The translations under genes were made by a program, and so were the position numbers. This document shows, piece by piece, positions 1-57,200 of a stretch of DNA of 64,000 nucleotides. Below the pieces are notes generated by a model. That model was not told where the DNA came from, made no database searches, and saw only the letters and a program-made list of their open reading frames with translations. The stretch's first letter is position 1; every line of letters begins with the position of its first letter. Source of the DNA: Octopus sinensis (Eukaryota); the NCBI RefSeq assembly GCF_006345805.1, contig NW_021837025.1, positions 308,946 to 372,945 on the forward strand, written 5' to 3'.

Positions 1-817
1 TCGAGTTATCGACAGACACTCACTCTATCCATATATAAATACCCAAACCTCCTTGGAAGTAAAGAAGGAGACCAGACAGTCGATGGCCGACTCAGTCAAA
101 TGGACATTATACATCACATCCACCACAAGTGTGAGTTTAGTGGACTGACTTTTGTACATAGAAAGTGGACATTTGTCAATATATCGACTCAGACAGTACA
201 AATTGTCTTTAGATATAGATTGGGGAGTAATATTGAGATAATGGTCCAGAATTATTAGTATTTGAGTGTTCAAATGAGTGGAAGAAGGACCCTTATAGGC
301 CTCCTCCACGACCTGAACGAATGCTTTGCAGACTACTGAGTCAAACAAGTTCTGAAATATGATTTATCCGACCTGCCTTAAAATGGGGCATTTTCTCTCG
401 TAGATTAATGAGGATATGCCCGATGGAGACATTGGCTGAGTTTAAAGACATTTTGGCCACCAGACGACTGAGGGAGTCACTCAGAATATTGTTAGAGAGA
501 CAGTCTGGGTTGCCTAAAATAGGGGACACGTCCTCGATTATGTTTTCTATTGACATTCCGCTGCATTGGTGAGGGGAGGGGACTTTATATTGGCGGTCAT
601 TAACTTTAGTCCAAAAGCACTGACTAGGGGATCACCGTATTGGAGAAGGCTTTTGCCGATGTTGTATGAATCTGGGTAGACAAGTAAATTTTCCAGATAC
701 TTGGGTTTAATATTATTGGCTAACCTTTGTGGAAATCATCATCTTAGAGGGGTCAGATGTAGGATTTTTGAATAGGTCTAAATGTTGGACCACCTCAGAA
801 ACAATATCACGATGCAT
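1..817 (-). CDS. 5' exons of a putative karyopherin-beta (exportin-5-like) gene, left-arm copy, cut by window edge
   Basis: Mirror of 54262-55078. ATG at 817; splices to MHRDIVSEVVQHLDLFKNPTSDPSKMMISTK|YLENLLVYPDSYNIGKSLLQYGDPLVSAFGLKLM. Confidence 0.5.
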
Positions 818-1062
818 TTTATAACACTTTATAAAATATTTATTTTCAATTTTAGTTTACCAATCAATAATTATATTATTATAATAATTAAAAAATATTT
901 ATAACAATTTATTGACTAATAAAAAAAAGTATTTGATCCATTTTACAAAGGAATGTCGTGTAATTTATTTGTATAATTAAAAATTGAATATAATAAAAAG
1001 TAATAATTAAAAAAATTACTAATTTATTTAGTTTAATATTTCTAAAAAAACGTGTTTTAAAG
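818..1062. promoter_or_regulatory. Putative bidirectional promoter between the exportin-like gene and LYAR
   Basis: 245 nt extremely AT-rich gap between divergent ATGs at 817(-) and 1063(+). Function is inferred from geometry only. Confidence 0.4.
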
Positions 1063-1826
1063 ATGGTCATTTTTGTTTGTGATGTGTGTGGTTCTTCCTT
1101 ACAAAAACGACAAGTAAATGGTCATCGGACGGAATGCAGTGTAAATTCAATTTCTTGCATTCAGTGTGGCATTAATCTAAAGTCCTTGCCATATTTGAAT
1201 ATTCCAGTCTCAATAATTTCGCCCAACACGATTGTTGTAGTTCAGACCAGCCCAAAAAACCAAATCTCAAAAAAGATATATTTCTACGAGTTATCTCCTC
1301 ACCTGATTTTTAGAACATTTCTTCATACCTCGAAAACCCTGACCCCACCTCCCTCCTCCAAATATTCCGACGTTTAAAACAAGTGCCCAACCTCCCCACC
1401 AAAGAACGTGCTTTCCGTGTATTTACCCCCTAAAAACTCAGAATTTTATTTTCTCTACTTTTTCCTGTCGGGAACCATCCACGGTGGACCAGATTTGGGA
1501 GATTGTGTCTGCACAACCAGCGAGTGTCCCCCAATCGAATATTCAGACTGAGAAGCCACCAAAGGACTCACATGTGGCCACCAATGTGGCTCAATCTATT
1601 CTAAACGGCAGTAATAAACACAGAATGAAACTGACTCGTTTGAGAAGGAAGGTATGGATGTGAGTAAGCATCTTAGACCATAAGAATGGTGGAAAGTGAG
1701 GGGAATGTCCCATTGGCTCATAAGTTGGGGAGTGACCTTTATTGGGACAGAATTGTTCGGAAATTGCAAAAAACTAAATATCTAACAGTCGATTCTGCAT
1801 ATGTCACGATTCTCACCAAATTATGA
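1063..1826 (+). CDS. LYAR: LYAR (cell growth-regulating nucleolar protein), multi-exon
   Basis: N-terminal LYAR-type C2HC zinc finger [29 protein letters not shown]. After removing 23-26 nt GT-AG introns the frame gives [19 protein letters not shown]...VDQIWEIV, matching the LYAR NVPRKKAKFQNW...DQVW motif; stop TGA at 1824-1826. Confidence 0.85.
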
Positions 1827-1934
1827 TTTTGATATCCAATTGAACATTTTTTTGACAATTTATATAACTTTATGATAACATCAGAAAGTATTGGAATAAT
1901 ATGTAAAGTGAGTGTCAGAAATAGAACAGTCAAT

Positions 1935-2536
1935 TCAATATCTAACAAGTTTTTCGATATGTTTGAAAAATAGCGAGGAATCTCCATTTTGGTAGTATTC
2001 AAGAGTAGACAAGTCCATTTGATTAATAAAATCAAAAAAATGACTAAATATGAGTATTTGATATCATACGTGAGAGTAGTATAGAATATGTAGTTATCCT
2101 CTCTCAATTTCTGGGCTAGTTCGAGCTGGTGGTTGTCGTATAAGGACTCATTTACCACCACCAGCAGTGGTATTCCCGCATTCAATGTTTCCAGGATTGT
2201 TCCCGCGCCTTACTAATTTCTGGAATTGGATAACCTCCGTGACTGATAACCAGATGGGCGGACTCGATGTCTGCTCGAATGGATGGTTTAAAACTGCTCA
2301 ATTTAGTATTTTATTTTACTTGTAGGCTTCAAGTTCGATGTTTGTGAGGTTATTTTTGAAGTTTTTAAAAATTGAATTTCCATGTTGAATTATTATTTTA
2401 GTGAATTTATTTGTATTTAGGTACTATTAAATGTATTTTATTATCTGACTTTATTAAAATTTTCAGATAAAACAGCAGTAATTAGAGAGTCAAAATTTGT
2501 TGTACCCACAGTCACAAAAACCAGACGTTGATCCAT
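1935..2536 (-). CDS. ALG13: ALG13 UDP-GlcNAc transferase subunit, multi-exon
   Basis: Spliced product [19 protein letters not shown]...LVISHG|[35 protein letters not shown] carries the ALG13 hallmark motifs. Confidence 0.92.
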
Positions 2537-2899
2537 TTTAAGTGATTTAAACAATTTAATCTCAGAAAATTAAGATATATATAATTAGAAACATAATTTA
2601 TAATCATTTGTTTATTCAGTTAAAGTCTTTTAGCTTGTAAAATATTACTAATCTCTTAGAAAGTCTAAGATGTGATATGAAGGAATGAATACACGTGGGA
2701 AACTGGTTACATTTTACCTTCAAATAATAATTTTGACAATAAATTTCATAATTAATTATTTTTAATCTACGGGTATCTCCTTTGGCATATTTAAATAAAA
2801 ATGCTTTTTTTCATCAACTTGATTTTTGGATAAATTGTTAATTATTTCAGAATTTAAATAGAATGGCAACTCGAATTTATCTAACCGCAACAGATATCT

Positions 2900-3720
2900 T
2901 TTTTTGAACAAAGGTATCTATGTATATTTAATCTCTGGCACTAAATCTGCATTTAGTATTATGGACATTCATTTCCCTACTAATTGATTAACAGTAAGCT
3001 GAGTTTCCATCAATCGGATTTAAATTAATTTTTAATTTGTCTAAACTCTCATAAAAATACTTTAAATCGGCTAAATATGAATTTCAAAATTAAAATACTT
3101 AAGTTTTCAATTGCGTTCAAATAAAAAATCTAGATTTAGGGCTATTCCTCTACAGCTATTAATAGCCAGTGCCTTGTCTTGGCGTGCATGATCTCCAAGG
3201 ACTTCCGCAACACCAGTGTCTGGATACTCCACTATGTCCAAATTTTAGTTTGACTTTCACAATGTCAAAAAGTGTAAACAGTTGGCCATGCGTAATTAGT
3301 TGTTCATCTTGTGCTGATAAAGCCAGAAATTGCGTCCAACAAAAAAATTCTATTAAAAATAATCAGTAATTTCCCCACCGAATTGGTTTTTTTCCAGTTC
3401 TCCTGGTAGGTTTTTTTGAAATTCTTAATAGAATTTTAAACTTTGTGGGAATGTACTAACAATATTATCTTCTAGAGAATTCATGATGTTTATGACTCCT
3501 TAATTGATGATTTGTTGATTCATATTCATCATAAGTGATTTTGTCCTAATAATATTTGTCGAATTCATTAAGATTTTTTAAACACCGAGGAGATTTGAAC
3601 TTTTAAATTAATATATGTCACAGTCGGATAAATGGACACTTTCAAATTTTAAGCAATATTGCCATACAAAATACACGTTAATTTTTTCCAAGTCTCACTT
3701 TAAACACATTTTTAATAATT
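2900..3720 (-). CDS. Possible micro-intron gene of unknown function; left copy appears frameshifted
   Basis: Candidate GT-AG micro-introns join frames into ..QFEFFCWTQFLALSAQDEQLITHGQLFTLFDIVK|YPDTGVAEVLGDHAR.. No family recognised. The left copy stops soon after NLDF, whereas the right copy stays open. Confidence 0.3.
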
Positions 3721-3872
3721 TTGGTACCTGTTGAAAAAAGCAGGATTTCGAAAAACCAACATCAAATAATGATTTAAAATTGTAAAAAATCCGTTAAAAT
3801 CGAGATAATAATTAAAATTTACATTATAAAATAGAAAAAAATTCTAGATTCCATATAAAAGCTTCGTCTACT

Positions 3873-3937
3873 CCTAACCCTAATCCATAACTCTATGGGA
3901 GCTTTGCCCATCCCTATCCCTAACTCAAATCCTAACC
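3873..3937. repeat. Degenerate interstitial telomere-like (CCCTAA)-type hexamer tract
   Basis: cctaaccctaatccataactc...ccctatccctaactcaaatcctaacc; mirrored at about 51171-51235. Confidence 0.5.
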
Positions 3938-3939
3938 GA

Positions 3940-4769
3940 TGATTGATTAGCGTTATTTGTGGCTTAATCGTCATTAATTTCTTAGCATAACATTATAGAA
4001 TTAATATTTGCTTGGCAATAAACACATTTATTAATTACTCCTGGAATTTCATTTAGCCTAAATCGTTGTTTTCTGTTGGGATTGTCGTCTAATGTGTGTT
4101 CTTCTTGGTTTCCTCTGATTTTTTGATTTTTTCAAGAATTTCTTTGCTGAGCTTCACAACCCGCATAGTTCCAGGCATTTTTGAATATTGAAAAAAGGTT
4201 AGACGAATTCTTTTCTCCAATTATAGTTTTGAATAGCAACTTGAGTTCTTTTTGAACTGGTCGAGCCATCCATTTGATGCTTTAAATAATTCGTAATTTA
4301 TTATGTGTGAAAAATTTGTATTGCAATAAGTTTCAACATGGTTTTAAGAATTGGAAAAAATTCATTTCTCAAACGTAGAAGTTTCAAAAACTCATCTATC
4401 TAGTGAAGACGATTTATCTTGTGTAAAAGATTGATTATTTGGATCGTATAATTCCTCGTTTCGATCACATTCAGTTAATCCCACATAAAAATAACAAGCA
4501 AAATTTTGTTTAATGCGAGAAATAGTAACTGTAATTAAAAAATTATTTGAATTCTTTTTAAAAACAATACAAGAATAAAAATAAAACTTAAAATGATAGT
4601 ACCATTTGTAATTTTAAATAAATTAAATATGTGCCCCATACCAGGGTCATCAAAAATAAATAATATATTGAAAAATTGACTATTTTTAAAAACTGCCCCA
4701 AAATGCGTGGGTGCCCCAAAACCGAAAGTGGACCACCCCTGAGGTCTGCCCTCAACTGGGGGCGTACTG
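3940..4769 (-). mobile_element. Truncated pogo/Tigger-like DNA transposon (family A), one TIR retained
   Basis: End reads TA|CAGTACGCCCCCAGTTGAGGGCAGACC, similar to the 39939 TIR, with the same GGGGCACCC subterminal motifs. A degenerate CENP-B HTH motif FKASNGWLDQFKK lies near 4240-4290. Mirrored at about 50339-51168. Confidence 0.7.
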
Positions 4770-5212
4770 TAGTGCACTTTTTATAATTTTGTAGAAAGTT
4801 TTTCATAGCAAAAAATTATTTAGGACACAGCTGGAAAAATCGACTTTCTGTCGCCTAAAAAGATTGCAACCGCTTTCCGGAGTTTCCCGTACAAGTCCAA
4901 TTCTATTTAGTGCCATTTTGTCGTTACCAGAACTATAAAGTAAATTTAAGACCAAGTTAATTCATTGTTCAGCACAAATCACCCGAATGTCGTTCACATA
5001 AAGCTAATTAGGTTCGACATTATTTGATTCCGTCAGAATTATACATATCGATCCAAAAGAATCTCGAAACCAGATTATAAATGAGTTTTGTAATGTCAAC
5101 AAATACTAGCAAAGAGTTTAAAATTGTCCAGGAACACTAACAGCAGAACTATTGAAGAAAGTAAATTAATTGACAGTATAAAACAATTTTCATTAAAATG
5201 GAGAAAATATAA

Positions 5213-7051
5213 TCACGTTCGATTAGGTCTGACAGCTTTCTTGCAAATGGGCTGGATGATGGTTCCCGATTTAGTGACAACCCTCGATTTGATCATTTTC
5301 CTAAATGCACTCTCCGGCACCCACGTTCGGTCAATCGGAGTCCTCAAACTCGCCTCAAACTGGGCAACACTCAAAAACGGGAAGGGAACGTGTCTTACCT
5401 AACAACTAACATAAATTATCACAACTCGATGCCCCTCAAATGTAGGCTGTTTCTTTGATATGATCACATTCCCAAACCCAGAATCACGGCGAGGATTTTC
5501 CCGCGCTTTCACAGTATACTGAGACTCACGTTTTTTATTTTTCTTAATTCCAGGGCCAGCCCACGAATTCCACCCAGGAAGAAAAGCCTCCAAATCTCTT
5601 TCTTTCTCGTCTTCAACAACTTTCTGCTTCTCATCCTTGAACTCCCCGACCACATCGACTCCATATGTCACATTCCCAGCAATATCCTCAAAGTTTGGCT
5701 GCTCATTGGGACACACGGACATCCCAGTCTCCACACTAAAGTCCCCCAACTTGAGACTACTCCTCCCAACATCAATTATTGGCTCCTACTCTCACATAAT
5801 AAAAATACTGGAATAGTCAGTTCTTTGTTGACAAATTCCTCCTCGTCCCAACCCCTCTTCGACTCCTTCGGGGCAACCACTGGCTTATATATCTCCGTCT
5901 CGTCCAAACAGCGGTTCATTTCAGCCCTCTCGTCCTCCCACGCCCCCGTCCTATCCACCAAATCTCTCTTCTTTGAACTCATTTGAGAAATAAACTCCCG
6001 AGCCTCCAAATTAATATTTCACATACACTTTCGTTGTATTTGGCATACATTTTTTGGTTATGTGCATATTTTGTGGACGCCGAGTGCTTCAAACTCATTC
6101 TTTCCTTCATTCGGTCAGTTCGGAGTTGGAGAACACGTCGGGAAAACTCCTCAGGGTCCTGTTCCTTGAGGTTTCCCAGGGTCCTCTCATCTTTCTTCCT
6201 CTTCTCGTGCCGAGTAATGCGGCGGTAACTTTTACTTTTGATTTTCTTGGCCCATTTCGCCTTCTTTTCATATTTTGCTTGAAGTGACCGAAGACGGGCC
6301 AATTCTGACTGCATTTTTCGAGCGCTTTCAACATCCATTGCCTTTAGGACCTTTCTTTCATTTTTTGTGAGAGTCAAAGCTGATTTGACTGTATTTTTGT
6401 TAGCTGAAAGCACTGATTGGATTTCCCTCTCCATTTCACAGTCCTCAGTCCGACATAGTGCCTTGTAGGGGTCAATCCTCTCATTTCTGGGGATCACGTG
6501 TTCCAGAGGGTACACAACTTGGTCGGACTAGGAATTGGGGTATTTCCAAACCTTTCTATTCATATCGACAGTGGGTTGCCATAAATTCACATCCTGCTTT
6601 GCTCGTTCATACAAAGCTTGTCTTTCGGTCTATTTTTTACTATTTTTGAGGGACCTTTCTTTTTTGGTTCGTTGATAAAGTTTTTTTAGGTTTTGGAGGT
6701 GGAATGGGTCGTAAGGCGTGCTTTTGTGCCGTTTTGGTTGAAATTAGGTCTGTTAGGGTGATTTGTTCACCTGAAATTCGTATTTTTGATTGAATGTGTA
6801 CTTGGTGGTATTCCGTGTTCTGATATTTTTTTTCCTGCCTCAGTTCGTTGTATTATTTCGGGTTTTTTTGGTTTTTGAACGTCGGCTTTAAGTTTTTTGA
6901 GCATCAAGGAATGATGGGCTGGATCGAGGTCAATATCATTGATTTCGTAGTTCGATATTTCATTATTTTGTGATTCTTTTGAAAGCAACCTTTATTATAA
7001 AATATTGTATGTTTTTAGTAACTTATCGAATATTTGGTGACTTTTACTCAT
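5213..7051 (-). CDS. UTP14: UTP14 (U3 snoRNA-associated protein 14), multi-exon
   Basis: Motifs ELARLRSLQAKYEKKAKWAKKIKSKSYRRI, FLPGWNSWAGPG, NVIISKK and PFPFLSVAQFEASLRTPIDRTW...KSRVVTKSGTIIQPI match the Utp14 family. Confidence 0.93.
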
Positions 7052-7429
7052 GACACCACTAAACCAATAACGTGTATATAATTTTTAAATTAAAATATTT
7101 TTAAAAATAAATAATTTATAATACTATTCAAACTAACAAACTGTTGTTTATATTTAACTTAAATCTTACATTTCTTATGCGTCTTTGAATATCTATCTTT
7201 AGTCACATTAAAATAAATCATTACATGACATGGTTTGACGTATCTTCTGAGATCTAAATTTATTTTAGCTAATATTTATTCGAGATTTATTTTCGACAAT
7301 TTTAGTAAATTTGATTATTTAGAAATGCCTTGTCTCTTTATTTTTTATATTTTTAAATAATATATTTAACTGTAATGCAAGAAAATGATTATTAAATAAT
7401 TTAATAGCTAAATTTATTTCCATAGAAAA

Positions 7430-7973
7430 ATGACGAATGTTAGTCAACAGAGCCCTGTTTCTGATTATTTCGTGGAAGAAGAACTTCAATGTGAATTTTT
7501 AAAATTCAGTACTCAGGGTTTCGACAGAATTTCAAATTATATTCCTCCAAGTCAGAGGATGACTCGATAACCATCTCTGAGCTCCCTCAGGTGATGAGAA
7601 TGTGCGGATACAACCCAAAGGAACGCCAAATAAAAATCTTATGTGAAGAATTATTATTGAAAAGTTATTTAAACGTTTAATCCTAGAAAACGGAGTTGTT
7701 AAATTTCCTGATCTGGTTTTTGCTCTTCAAAGCCTCGACAGAAAACCAGAAAAAATAAGAGAAATTTTAGCTGCCTTTCGAGTTATCGATAAAGAAGGAG
7801 ATGGGTTCATTCAAACCGACCTCCTTCGGCATGTCTTGACTACTGTGGGAGAGGAGTACAACGCCGATGAGATCGGAACCTTCCTTAAGGTCACTGAACC
7901 AGACGTGGATGGTAATCTCGACTATATCGAGTTTGTAAAAAAGTTCCATCCTATTCCACGACCAACTAGTTAA
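7430..7973 (+). CDS. Calmodulin-like / myosin-light-chain-like EF-hand protein
   Basis: Spliced frame ELPQVMRMCGYNPKE...EILAAFRVIDKEGDGFIQTDLLRHVLTTVGEEYNADEIGTFLKVTEPDVDGNLDYIEFVKK; stop TAA at 7971-7973. Confidence 0.85.
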
Positions 7974-8334
7974 AATTTCTAATCAACTATTTTTTTCAAT
8001 CTTAATTTCTCAAACCAAACTACATTTACAATTGTGTACTAATCTGTGTATACTTATCCTCTTCAACTTAAGATGTAATTCTACGTGCTCTGTTATTATA
8101 CCAATTAGTTGAGGATTGGAATTAAAGTTATCCCCAAGTTGCACATCATCAGTTAAATTTTTGAGATGGCTCAAAAACTCGATTATTTTAAGAGATGGCT
8201 CAAAAAACTTTTTTCTTTTTGATTGAAAGATTCATTTGATGAACGATCATTGGCCTGATCACTCAGAAGGAAAAAACTTGTTTGTTTAATTTATCTAATT
8301 TAACAATTTTTCATTAGATATTACTAAAAACAAA

Positions 8335-9310
8335 GACAAAAATTATTTGAACTGCCCGCGCATAAGATAATATGGGCAGTTCCCCCGGACAATCGCCAAC
8401 GAGACTCTTTGAAGAAGATGACAAGTCTCGTAGAGATTTTTTACTTTTCTTGGTGATCTTTGTCCCCAAATTCTCTTATTGAATCCCCTTTGAACCATGA
8501 GTTCTCTTTGGCTGTTAAATGCTGATCCGCTAATGGTCATAAGGTTTCTGATGATTTAACCAAACAGCGGAAATTGGACACAATTTTTTTCCGACTACAA
8601 CATTTTGTTCCTCAGGTGTAAACTTGATTAACACCGCCTGGCCTGTTTGCTCGCAGAGTCCCAAAAGTATTCAGGAGCCTGCTGATAGCTATCCCGATGG
8701 CGTCAGTTGACACATTACTGGATAACGAATGCCTCCGTGTCGCAGTTTCTCTGCACCTTGGATTGAACATCTGCCGTGAGCATTAATTCCGCTGTCGTCA
8801 GACGATTGATACCTTATGACTACATCCGCTATCTTTCTCTCGCTACTTTGGTCTTAATGATGTGGTGAGCCGCGCCCTGGCATCTGCGGGATTCTCTAAT
8901 GTGTTGGAACCAGTCGGGTTGGATTGCAGAGATGGAAAACATCCAAATGGCATGACAACATTTCCCTTCGACCACGGGAAATGCCTCATCTTGGACGCGA
9001 CATGCTCTAACAATTTCTCTCCCAACAATCTGATCTTGTTAGTTGCCGAGCCTGGCTTGGCGGAAGACACGTGGATCATGGAAAGTCAACAAAATACTCG
9101 TCCCTGGCCAGAAATCAATAGCTGTGGAGACATTCTGGGTCATCGGTCCGGAATCGCTTTCTTTCCTTTGTCGGCTAACGAAGATCGCTAAGAAAAGTAA
9201 AAATCCAACGAGACTCTTTATTTTCTGCAAAGAGTGTCGTTGGGGATCTTTTGGGGAAACTGTCAGGCCATCTTATGCGCAGGCAGTTCAATATCATTTT
9301 TGTCCATGAA
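8335..9310. mobile_element. Two 3' fragments of a CRE-like (restriction-like endonuclease, RLE) non-LTR retrotransposon in opposite orientation
   Basis: Plus strand: LNDVVSRALASAG..LEPVGLDCRDGKHPNGMT..GKCLILDATC and IAVETFWVIGPESLSFL. Minus strand 8343-8540: ETCHLLQRVSLAIVRGN. Contains stops and frameshifts. Flanked by an ~80 bp direct repeat (8229-8309, 9381-9458). Confidence 0.75.
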
Positions 9311-9731
9311 AATTGTGTATGAATTATCGCCCGTTACTTTTATTTTTAAGTATTATAGTTCATTAAAAAATATATTGAGAGATTCATTTGATCAACGCTA
9401 ATCGGCCTTGTCACTCAGAAGGAGAAAAACTTGTTTAATTTATCTAATTTTACAATTTGAACTAATAAATCATAAAATTGCCATACTTTGTTCTAAATGT
9501 CACTGTTTTGATAAATTTTAGATATATTTTTGTTTTTAATGTGTTTTTAGTCTTCAGATAACTCATGATTCTTTTATTCAAATCACAATTTGAGGTTATT
9601 TACGTTATTAATTTGGTAAGCGGTTGAGCTTAACCGGAAGTGTCAAACCGAAAAATTTCCTGATAATTCAAAGCATTGAAATTAAACCATCTTTTAGTAG
9701 AGGAAAAGAAAAAATATTAGCAAATTATTTT

Positions 9732-10139
9732 TTAGTTGAGCCCGTACATGAGCTGAGCAATTGCAGCAATAATGCTTATTTTCCCAACAATTTTAGATGT
9801 CTCCGAACTTGGCAAGGTTCCGTTTGGTGTTGTTGCATTTGTTACTGGCGTTGCTGTTGTAGCTGTAGGTGTAGCAGTCGTATCTGATGCTGCTGTAGTT
9901 GTAGGTGCCTCTGTTGTTGTGGTTGTAGGTGCCTCTGTTGTTGTGGTTGTAGGTGCCTCTGTTGCTGTGGTTGTAGCTGCCTCTGTTGCTGTGCTTGTTG
10001 TTTCATCTGTTGCCGTTGTTGTAGCTGCCCCTGTTTCTGGAATACCAGCGGCAGTTGCTTGATTGAATAAGAATATCACTAGGTAAATAATATTAGATAG
10101 AATACTGAATATTCCAAAGATACAAAATGCAATTTTCAT
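9732..10139 (-). CDS. Small Thr/Ala-rich mucin-like surface protein, putative signal peptide and GPI signal
   Basis: Hydrophobic N-terminus MKIAFCIFGIF(27-nt intron)MIFLFNQATA, four 24-bp repeats encoding (A/T)TEA(A/P)TTT, NAT and NGT sequons, and hydrophobic tail IVGKISIIAAIAQLMYGLN*. Confidence 0.75.
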   Translation of the reverse strand: MKIAFCIFGIFSILSNIIYLVIFLFNQATAAGIPETGAATTTATDETTSTATEAATTTATEAPTTTTTEAPTTTTTEAPTTTAASDTTATPTATTATPVTNATTPNGTLPSSETSKIVGKISIIAAIAQLMYGLN

Positions 10140-13231: not shown

Positions 13232-13299
13232 ACGAGTTTCCACATTTTTTCATGATTTCTTTCTCTGTAAGAATTCTGTTTGTTGAAATTATTTTAAAA

Positions 13300-41679: not shown

Positions 41680-41681
41680 TA

Positions 41682-46810: not shown

Positions 46811-47139
46811 GTTTTTAGTAATATCTAATGAAAAATTGTTAAATTAGATAAATTAAACAAACAAGTTTTTTCCTTCTGAGTGATCAGGCCAATGATCGTT
46901 CATCAAATGAATTTCTCAATCAAAAAGAAAAAAGTTTTTTGAGCCATCTCAAAAATTTAACTGATGATATGCAACTTAGGGATAACTTTAATTCGAATCC
47001 TCAACTAATTGGTATAATAACAGAGCACGTAGAATTACATCTTAAGTTGAAGAGGATAAGTATACACAGATTAGTACACAATTGTAAATGTAGTTTGGTT
47101 TGAGAAATTAAGATTGGAAAAAATAGTTGATTAGAAATT

Positions 47140-47683
47140 TTAACTAGTTGGTCGTGGAATGGGATGGAACTTTTTTACAAACTCGATATAGTCGAGATTA
47201 CCATCCACGTCTGGTTCAGTGACCTTAAGGAAGGTTCCGATCTCATCGGCGTTGTACTCCTCTCCCACAGTTGTCAAGACATGCCGAAGGAGGTCGGTTT
47301 GAATGAACCCATCTCCTTCTTTATCGATAACTCGAAAGGCAGCTAAAATTTCTCTTATTTTTTCTGGTTTTCTGTCGAGGCTTTGAAGAGCAAAAACCAG
47401 ATCAGGAAATTTAACAACTCCGTTTTCTAGGATTAAACGTTTAAATAACTTTTCAACAATAATTCTTCACATAAGATTTTTATTTGGCGTTCCTTTGGGT
47501 TGTATCCGCACATTCTCATCACCTGAGGGAGCTCAGCGATGGTTATCGAGTCATCCTCTGACTTGGAGGAATATAATTTGAAATTCTGTCGAAACCCTGA
47601 GTACTGAATTTTAAAAATTCACATTGAAGTTCTTCTTCCACGAAATAATCAGAAACAGGGCTCTGTTGACTAACATTCGTCAT
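47140..47683 (-). CDS. Calmodulin-like EF-hand protein, right-arm copy
   Basis: Mirror of 7430-7973. Confidence 0.85.
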
Positions 47684-48056
47684 TTTTCTATGGAAATAAA
47701 TTTAGCTATTAAATTATTTAATAATCATTTTCTTGCATTACAATTAAATATATTATTTAAAAATATAAAAAAATAAAGAGACAAGACATTTCTAAATAAT
47801 CAAATTTACTAAAATTGTCGAAAATAAATCTCGAATAAATATTAGCTAAAATAAATTTAGATCTCAGAAGATACGTCAAACCATGTAATGATTTATTTTA
47901 ATGTGACTAAAGATAGATATTCAAAGACGAATAAGAAATGTAAGATTTAAGTTAAATATAAACAACAGTTTGTTAGTTTGAATAGTATTATAAATTATTT
48001 ATTTTTAAAATATTTTAATTTAAAAATTATATACACGTTATTGGTTTAGTGGTGTC

Positions 48057-49895
48057 ATGAGTAATAGTCATCAAATATTCGATAAGTTAGTAAAAAAATA
48101 CAATATTTTATAATAAAGGTTGCTTTCAAAAGAATCACAAAATAATGAAATATCGAACTACGAAATCAATGATATTGACCTCGATCCAGCCCATCATTCC
48201 TTGATGCTCAAAAAACTTAAAGCCGACGTTCAAAAACCAAAAAAACCCGAAATAATACAACGAACTGAGGCAGGAAAAAAAATATCAGAACACGGAATAC
48301 CACCAAGTACACATTCAATCAAAAATACGAATTTCAGGTGAACAAATCACCCTAACAGACCTAATTTCAACCAAAACGGCACAAAAGCACGCCTTACGAC
48401 CCATTCCACCTCCAAAACCTAAAAAAACTTTATCAACGAACCAAAAAAGAAAGGTCCCTCAAAAATAGTAAAAAATAGACCGAAAGACAAGCTTTGTATG
48501 AACGAGCAAAGCAGGATGTGAATTTATGGCAACCCACTGTCGATATGAATAGAAAGGTTTGGAAATACCCCAATTCCTAGTCCGACCAAGTTGTGTACCC
48601 TCTGGAACACGTGATCCCCAGAAATGAGAGGATTGACCCCTACAAGGCACTATGTCGGACTGAGGACTGTGAAATGGAGAGGGAAATCCAATCAGTGCTT
48701 TCAGCTAACAAAAATACAGTCAAATCAGCTTTGACTCTCACAAAAAATGAAAGAAAGGTCCTAAAGGCAATGGATGTTGAAAGCGCTCGAAAAATGCAGT
48801 CAGAATTGGCCCGTCTTCGGTCACTTCAAGCAAAATATGAAAAGAAGGCGAAATGGGCCAAGAAAATCAAAAGTAAAAGTTACCGCCGCATTACTCGGCA
48901 CGAGAAGAGGAAGAAAGATGAGAGGACCCTGGGAAACCTCAAGGAACAGGACCCTGAGGAGTTTTCCCGACGTGTTCTCCAACTCCGAACTGACCGAATG
49001 AAGGAAAGAATGAGTTTGAAGCACTCAGCGTCCACAAAATATGCACATAACCAAAAAATGTATGCCAAATACAACGAAAGTGTATGTGAAATATTAATTT
49101 GGAGGCTCGGGAGTTTATTTCTCAAATGAGTTCAAAGAAGAGAGATTTGGTGGATAGGACGGGGGCGTGGGAGGACGAGAGGGCTGAAATGAACCGCTGT
49201 TTGGACGAGACGGAGATATATAAGCCAGTGGTTGCCCCGAAGGAGTCGAAGAGGGGTTGGGACGAGGAGGAATTTGTCAACAAAGAACTGACTATTCCAG
49301 TATTTTTATTATGTGAGAGTAGGAGCCAATAATTGATGTTGGGAGGAGTAGTCTCAAGTTGGGGGACTTTAGTGTGGAGACTGGGATGTCCGTGTGTCCC
49401 AATGAGCAGCCAAACTTTGAGGATATTGCTGGGAATGTGACATATGGAGTCGATGTGGTCGGGGAGTTCAAGGATGAGAAGCAGAAAGTTGTTGAAGACG
49501 AGAAAGAAAGAGATTTGGAGGCTTTTCTTCCTGGGTGGAATTCGTGGGCTGGCCCTGGAATTAAGAAAAATAAAAAACGTGAGTCTCAGTATACTGTGAA
49601 AGCGCGGGAAAATCCTCGCCGTGATTCTGGGTTTGGGAATGTGATCATATCAAAGAAACAGCCTACATTTGAGGGGCATCGAGTTGTGATAATTTATGTT
49701 AGTTGTTAGGTAAGACACGTTCCCTTCCCGTTTTTGAGTGTTGCCCAGTTTGAGGCGAGTTTGAGGACTCCGATTGACCGAACGTGGGTGCCGGAGAGTG
49801 CATTTAGGAAAATGATCAAATCGAGGGTTGTCACTAAATCGGGAACCATCATCCAGCCCATTTGCAAGAAAGCTGTCAGACCTAATCGAACGTGA
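48057..49895 (+). CDS. UTP14: UTP14, right-arm copy
   Basis: Mirror of 5213-7051; ORF-track translations are identical except the first exon (MSNSH vs MSKSH). Confidence 0.93.
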
Positions 49896-51389
49896 TTATA
49901 TTTTCTCCATTTTAATGAAAATTGTTTTATACTGTCAATTAATTTACTTTCTTCAATAGTTCTGCTGTTAGTGTTCCTGGACAATTTTAAACTCTTTGCT
50001 AGTATTTGTTGACATTACAAAACTCATTTATAATCTGGTTTCGAGATTCTTTTGGATCGATATGTATAATTCTGACGGAATCAAATAATGTCGAACCTAA
50101 TTAGCTTTATGTGAACGACATTCGGGTGATTTGTGCTGAACAATGAATTAACTTGGTCTTAAATTTACTTTATAGTTCTGGTAACGACAAAATGGCACTA
50201 AATAGAATTGGACTTGTACGGGAAACTCCGGAAAGCGGTTGCAATCTTTTTAGGCGACAGAAAGTCGATTTTTCCAGCTGTGTCCTAAATAATTTTTTGC
50301 TATGAAAAACTTTCTACAAAATTATAAAAAGTGCACTACAGTACGCCCCCAGTTGAGGGCAGACCTCAGGGGTGGTCCACTTTCGGTTTTGGGGCACCCA
50401 CGCATTTTGGGGCAGTTTTTAAAAATAGTCAATTTTTCAATATATTATTTATTTTTGATGACCCTGGTATGGGGCACATATTTAATTTATTTAAAATTAC
50501 AAATGGTACTATCATTTTAAGTTTTATTTTTATTCTTGTATTGTTCTTAAAAAGAATTCAAATAATTTTTTAATTACAGTTACTATTTCTCGCATTAAAC
50601 AAAATTTTGCTTGTTATTTTTATGTGGGATTAACTGAATGTGATCGAAACGAGGAATTATACGATCCAAATAATCAATCTTTTACACAAGATAAATCGTC
50701 TTCACTAGATAGATGAGTTTTTGAAACTTCTACGTTTGAGAAATGAATTTTTTCCAATTCTTAAAACCATGTTGAAACTTATTGCAATACAAATTTTTCA
50801 CACATAATAAATTACGAATTATTTAAAGCATCAAATGGATGGCTCGACCAGTTCAAAAAGAACTCAAGTTGCTATTCAAAACTATAATTGGAGAAAAGAA
50901 TTCGTCTAACCTTTTTTCAATATTCAAAAATGCCTGGAACTATGCGGGTTGTGAAGCTCAGCAAAGAAATTCTTGAAAAAATCAAAAAATCAGAGGAAAC
51001 CAAGAAGAACACACATTAGACGACAATCCCAACAGAAAACAACGATTTAGGCTAAATGAAATTCCAGGAGTAATTAATAAATGTGTTTATTGCCAAGCAA
51101 ATATTAATTCTATAATGTTAGGCTAAGAAATTAATGACGATTAAGCCACAAATAACGCTAATCAATCATCGGTTAGGATTTGAGTTAGGGATAGGGATGG
51201 GCAAAGCTCCCATAGAGTTATGGATTAGGGTTAGGAGTAGGCGAAGCTTTTATATGGAATCTAGAATTTTTTTCTATTTTATAATGTAAATTTTAATTAT
51301 TATCTCGATTTTAACGGATTTTTTACAATTTTAAATCATTATTTGATGTTGGTTTTTCGAAATCCTGCTTTTTTCAACAGGTACCAAAA

Positions 51390-52127
51390 TTATTAAAAAT
51401 GTGTTTAAAGTGAGACTTGGAAAAAATTAACGTGTATTTTGTATGGCAATATTGCTTAAAATTTGAAAGTGTCCATTTATCCGACTGTGACATATATTAA
51501 TTTAAAAGTTCAAATCTCCTCGGTGTTTAAAAAATCTTAATGAATTCGACAAATATTATTAGGACAAAATCACTTATGATGAATATGAATCAACAAATCA
51601 TCAATTAAGGAGTCATAAACATCATGAATTCTCTAGAAGATAATATTGTTAGTACATTCCCACAAAGTTTAAAATTCTATTAAGAATTTCAAAAAAACCT
51701 ACCAGGAGAACTGGAAAAAAACCAATTCGGTGGGGAAATTACTGATTATTTTTAATAGAATTTTTTTGTTGGACGCAATTTCTGGCTTTATCAGCACAAG
51801 ATGAACAACTAATTACGCATGGCCAACTGTTTACACTTTTTGACATTGTGAAAGTCAAACTAAAATTTGGACATAATGGAGTATCCAGACACTGGTGTTG
51901 CGGAAGTCCTTGGAGACCATGCACGCCGAGACAAGGCACTGGTTATTAATAGTTGTGGAGGAGGTATCCTAAATCTAGATTTTTTTAACTTGGACGCAAT
52001 TGAAAACTTGAGTATTTTAATTTCGCAATTCGATTTGAAGTATTTTTATGAGAGTTTAGACAAATTCAAAATTGATTTTTATCCGATTGATGAAAACTCA
52101 GCTTACTGTGAATGTCCACATTACTAA
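51390..52127 (+). CDS. Possible micro-intron gene of unknown function, right-arm copy with open 3' exon
   Basis: ORF 51867-52127 stays open (YPDTGVAEVLG...AYCECPHY*); the upstream exon joins are tentative. Confidence 0.33.
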
Positions 52128-52542
52128 ATACAAATTTAGTGCCAAAAATAAAATATACATAGATAACTTTGTTCAAAAAAAGATATTTGTTGCAGTTTGA
52201 TAAATTCGAGTTGCCATTCTATTTAAATTCTGAAATAATTAACAATTTATCCAAAAATCAAGTTGATGAAAAAAAGCATTTTTATTTAAATATGCCAAAG
52301 GAGATACCCGTAGATTAAAAATAATTAGTTATGAAATTTATTGTCAAAATTATTATTTGAAGGTAAAATGTAACCAGTTTCCCACGTGTATTCATTCCTT
52401 CATATCACATCTTAGACTTTCTAAGAGATTAGTAATATTTTACAAGCTAAAAGACTTTAACTTTATAAAAAATGATTATAAATTATGTTTCTAATTATAT
52501 ATATCTTAATTTTCTGAGATTAAATTGTTTAAATCACTTAAA

Positions 52543-53144
52543 ATGGATCAACGTCTGGTTTTTGTGACTGTGGGTACAACAAATTTTGACTCTCTAATTA
52601 CTGCTGTTTTATCTGAAAATTTTAATAAAGTCAGATAATAAAATACATTTAATAGTACCTAAATACAAATAAATTCACTAAAATAATAATTCAACATGGA
52701 AATTCAATTTTTAAAAACTTCAAAAATAACCTCACAAACATCGAACTTGAAGCCTACAAGTAAAACAAAATACTAAATTGAGCAGTTTTAAACCATCCAT
52801 TCGAGCAGACATCGAGTCCGCCCATCTGGTTATCAGTCACGGAGGTTATCCAATTCCAGAAATTAGTAAGGCGCGGGAACAATCCTGGAAACATTGAATG
52901 CGGGAATACCACTGCTGGTGGTGGTAAATGAGTCCTTATACGACAACCACCAGCTCGAACTAGCCCAGAAATTGAGAGAGGATAACTACATATTCTATAC
53001 TACTCTCACGTATGATATCAAATACTCATATTTAGTCATTTTTTTGATTTTATTAATCAAATGGACTTGTCTACTCTGGAATACTACCAAAATGGAGATT
53101 CCTCGCTTTTTTTCAAACATATCGAAAAACTTGTTAGATATTGA
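52543..53144 (+). CDS. ALG13: ALG13, right-arm copy
   Basis: Mirror of 1935-2536; the two last-exon differences checked are synonymous (CTG/CTT and CTT/CTA Leu). Confidence 0.92.
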
Positions 53145-53252
53145 ATTGACTGTTCTATTTCTGACACTCACTTTACATATTATTCCAATACTTTCTGATG
53201 TTATCATAAAGTTATATAAATTGTCAAAAAAATGTTCAATTGGATATCAAAA

Positions 53253-54016
53253 TCATAATTTAGTGAGAATCGTGACATATGCAGAATCGACTGTTAGATA
53301 TTTAGTTTTTTGCAATTTCCGAACAATTCTGTCCCAATAAAGGTCATTCCCCAACTTATGAGCCAATGGGACATTCCCCTCACTTTCCACCATTCTTATG
53401 GTCTAAGATGCTTACTCACATCCATACCTTCCTTCTCAAACGAGTCAGTTTCATTCTGTGTTTATTACTGCCGTTTAGAATAGATTGAGCCACATTGGTG
53501 GCCACATGTGAGTCCTTTGGTGGCTTCTCAGTCTGAATATTCGATTGGGGGACACTCGCTGGTTGTGCAGACACAATCTCCCAAATCTGGTCCACCGTGG
53601 ATGGTTCCCGACAGGAAAAAGTAGAGAAAATAAAATTCTGAGTTTTTAGGGGGTAAATACACGGAAAGCACGTTCTTTGGTGGGGAGGTTGGGTACTTGT
53701 TTTAAACGTCGGAATATTTGGAGGAGGGAGGTGGGGTCAGGGTTTTCGAGGTATGAAGAAATGTTCTAAAAATCAGGTGAGGAGATAACTCGTAGAAATA
53801 TATCTTTTTTGAGATTTGGTTTTTTGGGCTGGTCTGAACTACAACAATCGTGTTGGGCGAAATTATTGAGACTGGAATATTCAAATATGGCAAGGACTTT
53901 AGATTAATGCCACACTGAATGCAAGAAATTGAATTTACACTGCATTCCGTCCGATGACCATTTACTTGTCGTTTTTGTAAGGAAGAACCACACACATCAC
54001 AAACAAAAATGACCAT
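53253..54016 (-). CDS. LYAR: LYAR, right-arm copy
   Basis: Mirror of 1063-1826. Confidence 0.85.
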
Positions 54017-54261
54017 CTTTAAAACACGTTTTTTTAGAAATATTAAACTAAATAAATTAGTAATTTTTTTAATTATTACTTTTTATTATATTCAATTTTT
54101 AATTATACAAATAAATTACACGACATTCCTTTGTAAAATGGATCAAATACTTTTTTTTATTAGTCAATAAATTGTTATAAATATTTTTTAATTATTATAA
54201 TAATATAATTATTGATTGGTAAACTAAAATTGAAAATAAATATTTTATAAAGTGTTATAAA

Positions 54262-57200
54262 ATGCATCGTGATATTGTTTCTGAGGTGGTCCAACATTTA
54301 GACCTATTCAAAAATCCTACATCTGACCCCTCTAAGATGATGATTTCCACAAAGGTTAGCCAATAATATTAAACCCAAGTATCTGGAAAATTTACTTGTC
54401 TACCCAGATTCATACAACATCGGCAAAAGCCTTCTCCAATACGGTGATCCCCTAGTCAGTGCTTTTGGACTAAAGTTAATGACCGCCAATATAAAGTCCC
54501 CTCCCCTCACCAATGCAGCGGAATGTCAATAGAAAACATAATCGAGGACGTGTCCCCTATTTTAGGCAACCCAGACTGTCTCTCTAACAATATTCTGAGT
54601 GACTCCCTCAGTCGTCTGGTGGCCAAAATGTCTTTAAACTCAGCCAATGTCTCCATCGGGCATATCCTCATTAATCTACGAGAGAAAATGCCCCATTTTA
54701 AGGCAGGTCGGATAAATCATATTTCAGAACTTGTTTGACTCAGTAGTCTGCAAAGCATTCGTTCAGGTCGTGGAGGAGGCCTATAAGGGTCCTTCTTCCA
54801 CTCATTTGAACACTCAAATACTAATAATTCTGGACCATTATCTCAATATTACTCCCCAATCTATATCTAAAGACAATTTGTACTGTCTGAGTCGATATAT
54901 TGACAAATGTCCACTTTCTATGTACAAAAGTCAGTCCACTAAACTCACACTTGTGGTGGATGTGATGTATAATGTCCATTTGACTGAGTCGGCCATCGAC
55001 TGTCTGGTCTCCTTCTTTACTTCCAAGGAGGTTTGGGTATTTATATATGGATAGAGTGAGTGTCTGTCGATAACTCGATATTTGTTTCAGTCACATGAGA
55101 GACACTGTTCTTTTTTGAGTAGATTTGGTGGTTGGTTGGGGGATGTTTCCCTGGACTATTCACTCCTTAAGAAATACGCTTATTTCATTTCAGAGGCGGT
55201 TTCTGCCTTTAGAAATAGGATTGTGGTGACAAAGGGAGATCCCCCACACGTCTATTCTCCATTTCTCAACACAATTCAAGTTCTGATTGAAGTACTCCTG
55301 AATTGTCGGTCCATGGTTGGAGTGTGTCAATAATTCTATAGAAAGTGTCGATGTGTGCAGTTGAAGCATTCACTTATCTTGTTTTGAATAGAAGGGGGTC
55401 TCCTGTTATATCCGGTTATGTGTGCGAGGTGGTGATGAACGGTGGGCTGTTGAAACGGATTTTATATTCTTATTTTTATGTTGGTGTGGTTGTATATTTC
55501 AGCCTGAGTTTGAGAGGGGGAATTTGTGGATGGATGTGAGTGTCTTTGCGACTGATTTTGTGACTGAGGAGGACTATAATGAGTTTTGCAGAGGTTTGGG
55601 TTGTCTGTGACCCTTAGAATATGGCTTGAATATAGAGCACATGCTGCATGGAGTGCACAAGATGAATCCTCAATATCTCAATTCTGTATTTATATCAGTT
55701 ATTCAGGATATATTTGGGAATTACAATTTGAAAAGTAATAGTGTTGGTCGATTGGTAGATTCTGTCAGTTCGACTGTGAGTTTGCTGTCAAAAGTGACTG
55801 TTTTGTGCAGGATTTGTCTGCTGGACAAGTCATTCCATCCTACTGACGAGAATGAGAGGTCAGTGCTGCATCAAATATTCAAATATTTGTGTCAGTATTT
55901 GAAATGTGAATCCTGTGAGCACTGTGTGGGAGTACAGTCAATTTGGTGTCCTCAAAGAATGTCTCCGAATGTTCTAGAATGTTCTATATTGTAGTATATG
56001 GGACTGGTTGTCCATACTTTCACTACTCTTGCTGTGATTGCCAACAGTCCATATTCTGACCCTCCAATGGTCGACCTGGTCTTCGATACTGTTGATTGTG
56101 TGGGAATAGTGTAGATGATAGGCATGTATGGAATGTTTGAGTTGGTCGTGACTGATTTGGACAGTTTTGTGGCCAAGACCAGTCTGTCCAAGTTGTGTCG
56201 TTCAATCGTTGACTTTGTGTCCTCCAACAAGGCTCAGCTTTTTGTATTCGGAGGGATATTACTTTAGAACTCGAAAATTGACACAATCACTGTATTTCTG
56301 ACTCGTCTGCTCTCCCCCGAGTCATTGATGGCTAAAATGCCAATTTCCTACCCGTCCACACTGATTGAGATGTTGTTTGTAGTCATGTACTATTCTATAT
56401 ACACCCTAGCAAGCTGTATGAGGACAAATCCGTGATAAAACAGGCCTACAGTTTCTACTTTCTGCCTTATGTGGATGGATTCCTGTCGTCGGAGGAATAC
56501 AACAAGTAAGTTAATGGTTAACCAGACTATGCTGTAATCAAAACTCATTCCCTGCCTTCATGGAGGGATCAGTCGACGGTCGTTGTGAGAGGGTAGACAC
56601 ATTCACTAGCAGTAGTTGAATATTCTGCTCGAAGTCATCCACATATTCCTCACAATCGTGACTGAGGACTTGGGGGAGGAATTCGGGAATAGCATGGCTC
56701 GTCTTGTCTTAATGTGTATGCAGTTGGCACGGTATTGTCTTGCTTGCACGTGCAGTTCGGTGGCCTCTCTGTGGCAGGTCATTCGGGGTGACTGTGGAAA
56801 TACATTCTCCCTACTGGTGGAGGACGATACTGGTCTGCACTACACACGCAATTATCTGCACAAACTGTATTGACTGGCTTTACTTTAGATTGATGATTAT
56901 TAATCTGATTGAGAGCAAGTTTGAATTCGACCGACAGTTTTTCTTTGCTTTCATGACGAATCGACTACTGCCTTGCATACTCAGAACTAGTCACGTGGAT
57001 ATTTCTGTGTTCATACGTAAGGCACTGTGTTCTACTATAGGGGTTTTGTTGACTCCCCTGGTCATTCGGTATTCCGCCACGTCGGACGTGTTTGCCTTCA
57101 AGATTGCCCACATATTCATATATTGCATAATTGATGTAGTCTTGTGGGGTGATTGTAGATAATCATGGTTGCCAACCAGGAGGAATTCCTTAATGCTGTG

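What the first reader, a model, noticed from the sequence alone, without database searches (positions are those of the whole stretch)
1..55078. Gene-bearing inverted duplication (arms of at least 14.7 kb left and 13.4 kb right) around a 27 kb unique spacer
Seen: the first 14.7 kb recur reverse-complemented at 41682-55078, duplicating LYAR, ALG13, UTP14, a calmodulin-like gene, a surface mucin and the 5' end of an exportin-like gene. The arms are similar but not identical. Inference: either a true intrachromosomal palindrome, in which allele-like copies sit on one molecule and could undergo arm-to-arm conversion, or two haplotypes mis-joined by the assembler. The outer breakpoint is not visible.
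Basis: partly seen in the sequence, partly recalled or inferred. Interest (0 to 1): 0.8.

Follow-up and report, generated by a model that had tools for sequence, protein, structure and literature searches.

The report
Probable two-haplotype fold-back, parasite contig
The inverted duplication is really in the sequence, but it sits at the very end of a contig from an octopus kidney parasite (dicyemid-like) that was co-assembled with the octopus, and its two arms look more like two alleles strung together at a transposon than a true chromosomal palindrome.

Summary
The left arm is 1-14722 plus at least 4788 bp upstream of the window. The right arm is 41682 to at least 59894. Arm identity is 98-99.3%.

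The window is the last 64 kb of contig VCDQ01003981.1 (372,945 bp) of the Octopus sinensis assembly, so the right arm runs to within 4.1 kb of the contig end. The DNA is not octopus-like. Introns are 22-29 nt, GC is 35.5% and the sequence is rich in transposable elements (TEs), which fits a Dicyema kidney parasite.

Only one novel junction exists. The right arm ends exactly at the inverted terminal repeat (TIR) of an intact pogo-like transposon (39937-41681). That transposon interrupts a retroelement ORF that runs uninterrupted through the same point in the left arm.

The arms differ by about 1.0-1.3% substitutions (transitions:transversions 2.3:1), against a published D. japonicum heterozygosity of 1.24%. 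They also differ by a LINE insertion with target-site duplication present in one arm only.

Best reading (about 0.6): the arms are alleles. The contig switches haplotype across a pogo-associated heterozygous inversion, or is mis-joined inside the pogo repeat. A real TE-bounded palindrome remains possible (about 0.3). Read depth and spanning reads would decide.

The parts
1..14722 (+). Left arm. It continues at least 4788 bp upstream of the window, record 304158-308945.
41682..59894 (-). Right arm. 41682-55078 mirrors window 1-14722. 55079-59894 mirrors the 4788 bp upstream of the window at 99.3%. Whether 59895-64000 (the contig end) is also mirrored could not be checked.
14723..39936. Single-copy spacer. 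Contents: tail of the R2-like element, a RhoGAP-like exon at 15226-15588, TPR gene exons at 30402-31184, an intronless HtrL_YibB-like gene at 33625-34458, plus pogo, LINE and Helitron remnants (a hAT-like remnant at about 37900-38660 is a by-eye call; Pfam found nothing there).
39937..41681 (+). pogo/Tigger-like DNA transposon lying exactly on the right junction. TIRs are at 39937-39962 and 41658-41681 (TACAGTCCGAC...), with TA at both ends. An HTH ORF is at 40180-40596 and a DDE_1 ORF at 40802-41302. Its two flanks are not contiguous with each other: one is spacer, the other is the interrupted retroelement ORF of the right arm.
14431..14886 (+). C-terminal-domain ORF of an R2-like (RT plus C-terminal domain) non-LTR retroelement. 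It is uninterrupted across the left 'junction' at 14722/14723, so the left junction is the ancestral arrangement.
41682..41867 (-). Right-arm copy of the same ORF, cut off at about residue 97 by the pogo terminus.
11951..13231 (-). 5'-truncated LINE (RVT_1) insertion present only in the left arm. It is flanked by the 7-bp target-site duplication ACGAGTT (11944-11950 and 13232-13238). The right arm keeps the empty site at about 43200-43206.
1938..2536 (-). ALG13 with four GT-AG introns of 22-26 nt. The mirror copy is at about 52543-53141 (+).
5213..6434 (-). UTP14, RefSeq model XP_029657976.1. The real gene is longer and has introns of about 27 nt. The mirror copy differs by one synonymous base in the long exons compared.
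7430..7973 (+). EF-hand (calmodulin-like) gene. The mirror copy has 4 nucleotide differences.
9732..10232 (-). Thr/Ala-rich 'mucin-like' ORF with a 24-nt tandem repeat at 9891-10039 (mirror at 45086-45234).

Best explanation
The two arms are most likely two alleles of one locus of a dicyemid-like parasite genome that was co-assembled with its octopus host. They could be two haplotypes, or two clones in the parasite population. They were laid end to end, in opposite orientation, at the end of one contig. On this reading the structure is a false duplication and not a chromosomal palindrome.

The turn-around is at a pogo-like transposon. In one haplotype (the left half of the window) the order is: flank, arm, intact R2-like element, spacer. 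In the other, a pogo sits inside that R2-like element and is followed by the far end of the spacer in reverse.

The simplest way to get this arrangement is a heterozygous inversion of about 25 kb made between two inverted pogo copies. The assembler collapses the shared spacer, enters it on one haplotype and leaves it on the other. It then runs back along the second haplotype's copy of the arm until it runs out of unused reads, which is where the contig ends. A plain mis-join inside a repeated pogo would give the same picture.

Shown here: the anatomy, the single novel junction at the TIR, the contig-end position, and allele-level, patchy divergence with TE presence/absence differences. Inferred: that the arms are allelic, that an inversion exists, and that the organism is a Dicyema.
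For: (1) Position. Window position 64000 is the contig end (record 372945). The mirror reaches at least 59894, so the right arm runs into the contig end.

(2) One novel adjacency only. The left 'junction' is an uninterrupted retroelement ORF that aligns to the extreme C-terminus of 940-1310-aa RT proteins through residue 151. The right arm stops at residue ~97, exactly at the TIR of an intact pogo whose other flank is spacer. This is the signature of an inversion-type breakpoint. It is not a random chimeric ligation.

(3) Divergence. There are 173 substitutions in 13.4 kb (1.3%), or 179 in about 18.1 kb (1.0%). The transition:transversion ratio is 2.3 and there are multi-base indels. The published heterozygosity of D. 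japonicum is 1.24% (PMC6736024).

(4) Patchy divergence. UTP14 shows 0.05% over 2.2 kb, and there are no differences over 3.4 kb of outer arm. Intergenic and TE stretches show 1.6-2.8%. This is what variable coalescence between alleles would give.

(5) A LINE insertion with target-site duplication is present in one arm and the empty site in the other.

(6) The spacer gene P0001 and the UTP14 model each form a one-member protein cluster on one contig. No separate annotated haplotig of the locus turned up.

(7) Precedent. None of the gene-bearing palindromes of the first Adineta vaga assembly were retrieved in the chromosome-level AV20 assembly, and its authors judged them likely artefacts of erroneous scaffolding of phased haplotypes (PMC8494291; caveat also in PMC7953838).
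Against: No reads, depth or independent assembly could be examined, so allelism is inferred and not shown. The spacer and, as far as the sampled loci show, the rest of the 373-kb contig appear once. If so, the assembler collapsed haplotypes elsewhere yet kept the arms apart. A pogo exactly at the boundary is also what transposon-mediated (alternative-transposition) duplication would leave. Patchy identity with near-identical coding blocks is also what arm-to-arm gene conversion gives. A contig break inside a long near-identical repeat is expected for a real palindrome too. The last 4.1 kb of the window could not be compared with its putative mirror.
Confidence: 0.6

Rival explanations
1. A real inverted segmental duplication (palindrome) in the parasite genome. 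The arms are at least 19.5 kb around a ~27-kb spacer. It would have been created by, or bounded by, the pogo-like transposon, for example by alternative or sister-chromatid transposition. Both copies of ALG13, UTP14 and the EF-hand gene would be kept intact and partly homogenised by arm-to-arm gene conversion.
For: Both arms are on one contig, with a consensus built from distinct reads (173 substitutions plus indels). The transposon terminus lies exactly at the boundary. Coding blocks are almost identical while neighbouring non-coding DNA is 2-3% diverged; UTP14 has 1 synonymous difference in 2.2 kb. The spacer and the sampled parts of the rest of the contig appear once, so the assembler otherwise collapsed haplotypes. 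Contigs commonly break inside long near-identical repeats.
Against: Only one novel junction is visible and the outer one is missing, because the contig ends. Divergence matches the species' heterozygosity, which a duplication of arbitrary age has no reason to do. Overall identity of 98-99.3% is far below that of conversion-maintained palindromes. A duplicated block of housekeeping genes would be unusual in a genome reduced to about 5,000 genes. There is a precedent of such palindromes proving to be artefacts.
Confidence: 0.3
2. A pure assembler mis-join with no inversion in nature. Both haplotypes are colinear. One carries a pogo insertion inside the R2-like ORF, and another, oppositely oriented pogo copy lies at the right end of the spacer. 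The assembler entered one copy and left through the other, folding back onto the second haplotype. This is a sub-case of the best explanation, listed separately because it predicts different reads.
For: The element has intact TIRs and TA at both ends, yet its flanks are unrelated. The family has other members: a MITE-like piece in the arms at ~4690-4772, and more distant pogo copies at 23766-25130 and 59448-60700.
Against: A 1.7-kb repeat should be spanned by PacBio reads. No second copy of this particular pogo was found in the window or in 20 kb of the same contig sampled elsewhere.
Confidence: 0.2

Closest known systems
Assembly 'palindromes' of the first Adineta vaga genome (AV13), not retrieved in the chromosome-level AV20 assembly and judged by its authors likely artefacts of erroneous scaffolding of phased haplotypes (PMC8494291)
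   Same: Gene-bearing inverted collinear blocks on one scaffold. The arms are diverged at allele level. The structures were read at first as evidence for intrachromosomal allele-like copies.
   Different: Here the structure is inside a single long-read contig, not made by scaffolding. The turn-around is at a defined transposon. The artefact status here is inferred and not demonstrated with reads.
Ampliconic palindromes maintained by arm-to-arm gene conversion (e.g. primate Y chromosome; Rozen et al. 2003, as cited in PMC7953838)
   Same: Inverted arms of tens of kb around a unique spacer. The arms carry genes, and some blocks are nearly identical.
   Different: Identity here is 98-99.3% and patchy, not >99.9% throughout. 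The arms differ by TE insertions. The outer boundary is unseen. The organism and chromosome context are unrelated.
Transposon-associated inversions and inverted duplications (ectopic recombination between inverted TE copies; alternative transposition of cut-and-paste elements such as Ac/Ds or P). This comparison rests on my own knowledge.
   Same: An intact cut-and-paste element with TIRs sits exactly at the rearrangement junction and has non-contiguous flanks.
   Different: The second breakpoint and the second TE copy, which would define the event, are not in the available sequence.
Dicyema japonicum genome (Lu et al. 2019, PMC6736024)
   Same: The host is Octopus sinensis. GC is 36.7% there and 35.5% here. 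About half of that genome is repeats, with many LINEs. Introns are ultra-short.
   Different: No direct sequence comparison with that assembly was possible with these tools. The species, and even the genus, is inferred.

Membership tests
True chromosomal palindrome / inverted segmental duplication | Two reverse-complementary arms on the same DNA molecule | not testable with these tools
   Both arms are on one contig. A contig is a model, and no reads, Hi-C or independent assembly were available.
True chromosomal palindrome / inverted segmental duplication | Two novel junctions (inner and outer), each arm with its own flank | tested here: inconclusive
   Only one novel junction exists, the pogo at 39937-41681. 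The left inner junction is ancestral. The outer ends were not reached: the mirror holds to 59894 and the contig ends at 64000.
True chromosomal palindrome / inverted segmental duplication | Near-complete arm identity from ongoing gene conversion (for conversion-maintained palindromes) | tested here: not met
   Identity is 98.1-99.3% overall. There are 173 substitutions and 34 indel events in 13.4 kb, and one arm carries a 1.3-kb LINE. Only some blocks are near-identical.
False duplication from retained haplotypes | Copy divergence at the level of the organism's heterozygosity, with real (not error-like) differences | tested here: met
   1.0-1.3% substitutions, transition:transversion ratio 2.3, multi-base indels. 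Published D. japonicum heterozygosity is 1.24%. This rests on the inferred organism.
False duplication from retained haplotypes | Duplicate lies at a contig end or next to an assembly break | tested here: met
   Window 64000 equals record 372945, the contig end. The right arm reaches at least 59894.
False duplication from retained haplotypes | Each copy at about half the depth of flanking single-copy sequence | not testable with these tools
   No read data were accessible.
pogo/Tigger-type (DDE_1) cut-and-paste transposon | DDE_1 transposase, N-terminal HTH, terminal inverted repeats, TA at both ends | tested here: met
   DDE_1 at E=4e-30. A weak HTH hit (Trp_repressor, 2.4e-6). A TIR of about 26 bp at 39937-39962 / 41658-41681, with TA at both ends. 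The transposase is split over two ORFs, so it may be inactive.
R2-like (restriction-like-endonuclease) non-LTR retrotransposon | Central RT followed by a C-terminal domain; no N-terminal AP endonuclease | tested here: inconclusive
   The junction ORF matches the extreme C-terminus of 940-1310-aa proteins whose only Pfam domain is RVT_1. Endonuclease motifs were judged only by eye. The ORF itself has no Pfam or PDB hit.
Dicyemid (Dicyema) nuclear genome | Spliceosomal introns mostly under 30 nt. Among the 51 animal genomes compared in PMC13644364 this was seen only in dicyemids and myxobolid myxozoans. | tested here: met
   ALG13 has four GT-AG introns of 22-26 nt, and the spliced product hits Glyco_tran_28_C at 1e-28. 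UTP14 exons are separated by about 27 nt. Cuttlefish UTP14 spans 43.7 kb.
Dicyemid (Dicyema) nuclear genome | Sequence identity to a reference Dicyema assembly or transcriptome | not testable with these tools
   No Dicyema proteins surfaced in the protein searches. The best UTP14 hit is 40% identical, from a cuttlefish.

The most novel reading that the evidence does not exclude
A genuine gene-bearing palindrome of at least 19.5 kb per arm in a dicyemid genome. It would have been created at a pogo-like transposon, with arm-to-arm gene conversion keeping duplicated housekeeping genes (UTP14, ALG13, an EF-hand gene) nearly identical while non-coding DNA drifts. This would be the first large palindrome described in this highly reduced, partly clonally reproducing animal lineage.
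Probability: 0.3. Interest if true: 0.45.

Novelty: not a real feature. Interest (0 to 1): 0.25.

Why it matters
If the arms are alleles, the 'palindrome' should not be read as biology. It would then be one more case where uncollapsed haplotypes mimic intrachromosomal allele-like copies, as the authors of the later chromosome-level Adineta vaga assembly concluded for that species.

The practical point is larger than the palindrome. A 373-kb contig distributed and annotated as Octopus sinensis is, by its introns and composition, parasite DNA. Its RefSeq proteins, for example XP_029657976.1 and the LOC1152xxxxx HtrL-like proteins, carry the host's name and have wrong exon structures. That can seed false 'octopus-specific' genes or false gene-transfer claims.

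If instead the junction reflects a real pogo-associated inversion or duplication, it would be a concrete example of transposon-driven structural variation in a dicyemid.

Tried and rejected
(1) Reaching the sequence upstream of the window. Direct look-ups of ORFs failed. Thirty ORF and start-codon variants were tested by exact look-up. Twenty single-ORF guesses were absent. I then walked leftwards through genes called on the contig and enumerated splice models for the 298-aa UTP14 call. One of the 12 two-intron models enumerated (10 were submitted to the exact look-up) was in the collection. This gave 4788 bp upstream. No gene is called further upstream, so the last 4.1 kb of the window could not be compared with its putative mirror.

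(2) Independent assemblies. Protein searches with exportin-like, ALG13 and UTP14 queries returned no near-identical proteins from any other source. No second assembly of the locus could be examined.

(3) The missed-adapter (hairpin read) artefact was rejected. That artefact gives arms with no spacer, whereas here there is a 27-kb gene-bearing spacer.

(4) A random chimeric-read join was rejected. Both ends of the junction element are exact TIR termini with TA.

(5) A simple pogo insertion into the right arm was rejected. The sequence beyond the pogo is not the remainder of the retroelement ORF.

(6) The octopus origin of the DNA was rejected on intron size and gene compactness. A ciliate origin was considered and judged unlikely by inference from my own knowledge: standard stop codons, a metazoan-type TE load, and metazoan best hits.

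(7) Rfam and tRNA scans found nothing. Pfam and PDB searches did not support the names LYAR or exportin.


Full report
**Observation**

The inverted duplication is real in the sequence. The repeat finder and blastn place the left arm at 1-14722 and the right arm, reverse-complemented, at 41682-55078. Block identities are 98.1% (1-11029), 95.6%, 91% and 98.7%.

A global alignment gives 173 substitutions (120 transitions, 53 transversions) and 34 indel events. These include indels of 10-41 bp and one of 1288 bp. The differences are therefore biological and are not consensus noise.

The 26,959-bp spacer is single-copy within the window, apart from transposon fragments.

**Where the window comes from**

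The intronless spacer gene at 33625-34458 (P0001) lies on contig VCDQ01003981.1 (372,945 bp) of GCA_006345805.1, the Octopus sinensis assembly. The coordinates give window position 1 = record 308,946 and window position 64,000 = record 372,945. The window is thus the last 64 kb of the contig. This was re-checked with L006.

**The DNA is not octopus-like**

- ALG13 (1938-2536, minus strand) is interrupted by four GT-AG introns of 22-26 nt. The spliced product matches Glyco_tran_28_C over nearly the full profile at 1e-28.
- UTP14 exons are separated by about 27 nt.
- The nearest UTP14 in the databases is from a cuttlefish, is only 40% identical, and spans 43.7 kb.
- GC is 35.5% and TEs are abundant: pogo, LINE, R2-like and Helitron remnants.
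- In a comparison of 51 metazoan genomes, introns under 30 nt were found only in Dicyema japonicum and myxobolid myxozoans (PMC13644364).
- D. japonicum lives in the renal sac of O. sinensis. Its genome has 36.7% GC, 48.9% repeats and 1.24% heterozygosity (PMC6736024).

I therefore infer that the contig is dicyemid DNA co-assembled with the host. No direct match to a Dicyema reference could be made.

**True extent of the arms**

I walked left through genes called on the contig. I then reconstructed the exact RefSeq UTP14 model by enumerating splice models. The model is XP_029657976.1, which uses false 241- and 84-nt introns and skips a real exon.

This gave 4788 bp upstream of the window. They mirror 55079-59894 at 99.3%. 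The first 3369 bp are identical, followed by 6 mismatches and one 28-bp indel.

The arms are at least 19.5 kb and at least 18.2 kb. The right arm reaches to within 4.1 kb of the contig end. I could not obtain the next 4 kb upstream, so an outer boundary was neither found nor excluded.

**The junctions**

The left 'junction' is not a breakpoint. The ORF at 14431-14886 runs straight through 14722/14723. It aligns, through its last residue, to the extreme C-terminus of 940-1310-aa proteins whose Pfam domain is RVT_1. There are 626 cluster representatives. This is the C-terminal domain of an R2-like non-LTR element.

In the right arm the same ORF stops at about residue 97. What follows is the terminal inverted repeat of a pogo-like transposon at 39937-41681. 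Its TIRs are TACAGTCCGAC..., there is TA at both ends, and it carries an HTH ORF and a DDE_1 ORF (E = 4e-30). The other flank of this element is spacer sequence. It is not the remainder of the retroelement ORF.

The whole structure thus contains exactly one novel adjacency, and it is made through an intact cut-and-paste element with unrelated flanks. This excludes three artefacts or events:
- a random chimeric ligation, because both ends are exact TIR termini;
- a missed-adapter hairpin artefact, because there is a 27-kb spacer;
- a simple insertion, because the flanks do not match.

**Differences between the arms**

- A 5'-truncated LINE (RVT_1) with a 7-bp target-site duplication, ACGAGTT, is present only in the left arm. 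The right arm keeps the empty site.
- Divergence is very uneven. UTP14 shows 0.05% over 2.2 kb, with one synonymous change. ALG13 shows 0.5% and the EF-hand gene 0.74%. Intergenic and TE stretches show 1.6-2.8%. The outermost ~6 kb is almost identical.
- Overall substitution divergence is 1.3% within the window and 1.0% over all ~18.1 kb known. This is close to the published 1.24% heterozygosity of D. japonicum.

**Interpretation**

Three readings fit the anatomy.

(a) The arms are alleles and there is a heterozygous inversion of the ~25-kb spacer made between inverted pogo copies. The assembler collapses the spacer, enters on one haplotype and leaves on the other. It then runs back along the second haplotype's arm until the contig ends. 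This needs no assembler error beyond a phase switch. It explains the single novel junction, the intact pogo with unrelated flanks, the single-copy spacer, the allele-level divergence and the contig-end position.

(b) The arms are alleles and the assembler mis-joined inside a repeated pogo. This gives the same picture, but a 1.7-kb repeat should be spanned by long reads, and I found no second copy of this element.

(c) A real inverted duplication bounded or created by the pogo, with patchy gene conversion. In its favour, the assembler otherwise appears to have collapsed haplotypes: P0001 and the UTP14 model are one-member clusters on one contig. The near-identity of coding blocks is also what conversion would give. 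Against it: only one junction is visible, the divergence coincides with heterozygosity, and overall identity is much lower than in conversion-maintained palindromes. There is also the precedent of the A. vaga 'palindromes', which were not retrieved in the later chromosome-level assembly and were judged likely artefacts of scaffolding phased haplotypes (PMC8494291; caveat in PMC7953838).

I put (a)+(b) together at about 0.6, with (a) somewhat ahead. I put (c) at about 0.3 and leave the rest for something else.

**Comparison with known things**

As a pattern, this is closest to the haplotype-derived pseudo-palindromes of early assemblies of heterozygous genomes. As a possible biological object, it is closest to TE-associated inversions or inverted duplications.

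It fails the identity criterion of conversion-maintained palindromes. The criteria that would settle membership (same molecule, two junctions, depth) cannot be tested without reads.

**Verdict**

The finding is best treated as a probable assembly product in a contaminant contig. Interest is low to moderate.

The most useful by-products are two. First, a 373-kb 'Octopus sinensis' contig, and at least two other small scaffolds carrying the same HtrL-like family, are probably dicyemid DNA, with RefSeq gene models distorted by the 22-29-nt introns. Second, there is a clean candidate for a pogo-associated structural variant that reads could confirm.

Noticed in passing
whole window; contig VCDQ01003981.1 (also L002, record 63-84 kb, and L003, record 17-38 kb): The contig is labelled Octopus sinensis but has 22-29-nt introns, compact genes, 35.5% GC and a heavy TE load. 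This fits the dicyemid kidney parasite of that octopus. It is probable host-assembly contamination that has been annotated in RefSeq as octopus.
   Followed up: partly
window 5213-6434 (-): RefSeq model XP_029657976.1 ('UTP14 homolog C-like [Octopus sinensis]') is mis-spliced. It uses false 241- and 84-nt introns and skips a real ~240-nt exon, evidently because the true ~27-nt introns were not modelled. No identical model is on record for the mirror copy, even though the long UTP14 exons compared there translate identically.
   Followed up: yes
window 33625-34458 (+); L002 10001-10873; L003 10001-10750: Intronless genes of the HtrL_YibB family (PF09612, described as bacterial) form a small paralogous family (50-81% identity). 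Three lie on this contig and two on other small 'octopus' scaffolds. No hits were found outside this assembly. This is possibly a lineage-specific expansion or an old horizontal acquisition in the parasite. The window copy scores just at the Pfam cut-off (24.2 vs 24.1 bits).
   Followed up: partly
window 11944-13238: A 5'-truncated LINE (RVT_1) with a (TAAC)n-like tail and a 7-bp target-site duplication ACGAGTT, present in the left arm only. The right arm (~43200-43206) keeps the empty site.
   Followed up: yes
window ~4690-4772 and mirror 50357-50418: A short piece carrying the same terminal repeat as the junction pogo (…GGGGGCGTACTGTA). It is probably a MITE or solo end of that family, and it is present in both arms.
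   Followed up: partly
window 9891-10039 and 45086-45234: A 24-nt tandem repeat (6.2 copies, 84% matches) encoding Thr/Ala-rich repeats in a 166-aa ORF that appears (by eye) to have a hydrophobic N-terminal stretch. It has no family hit.
   Followed up: partly
window 23766-25130, 25541-26468, 35998-36321, 37900-38660, 59448-61883: Further transposon remnants. Two more pogo-like copies (about 71% identical to each other), LINE-like ORFs read by eye (25541-26468 had no Pfam hit; ~60878-61883 was not scanned), a Helitron/PIF1-type helicase fragment, and a possible hAT-like fragment. The right end of the spacer is a TE cluster.
   Followed up: partly
window 8222-9458 (mirror 45678-46920): Internal short direct and inverted repeats within each arm: 8222-8309 vs 9374-9458 (direct) and 8335-8463 vs 9178-9304 (inverted). 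They surround ORFs that look TE-derived. Not classified.
   Followed up: no
Its identity is unknown.
   Followed up: partly
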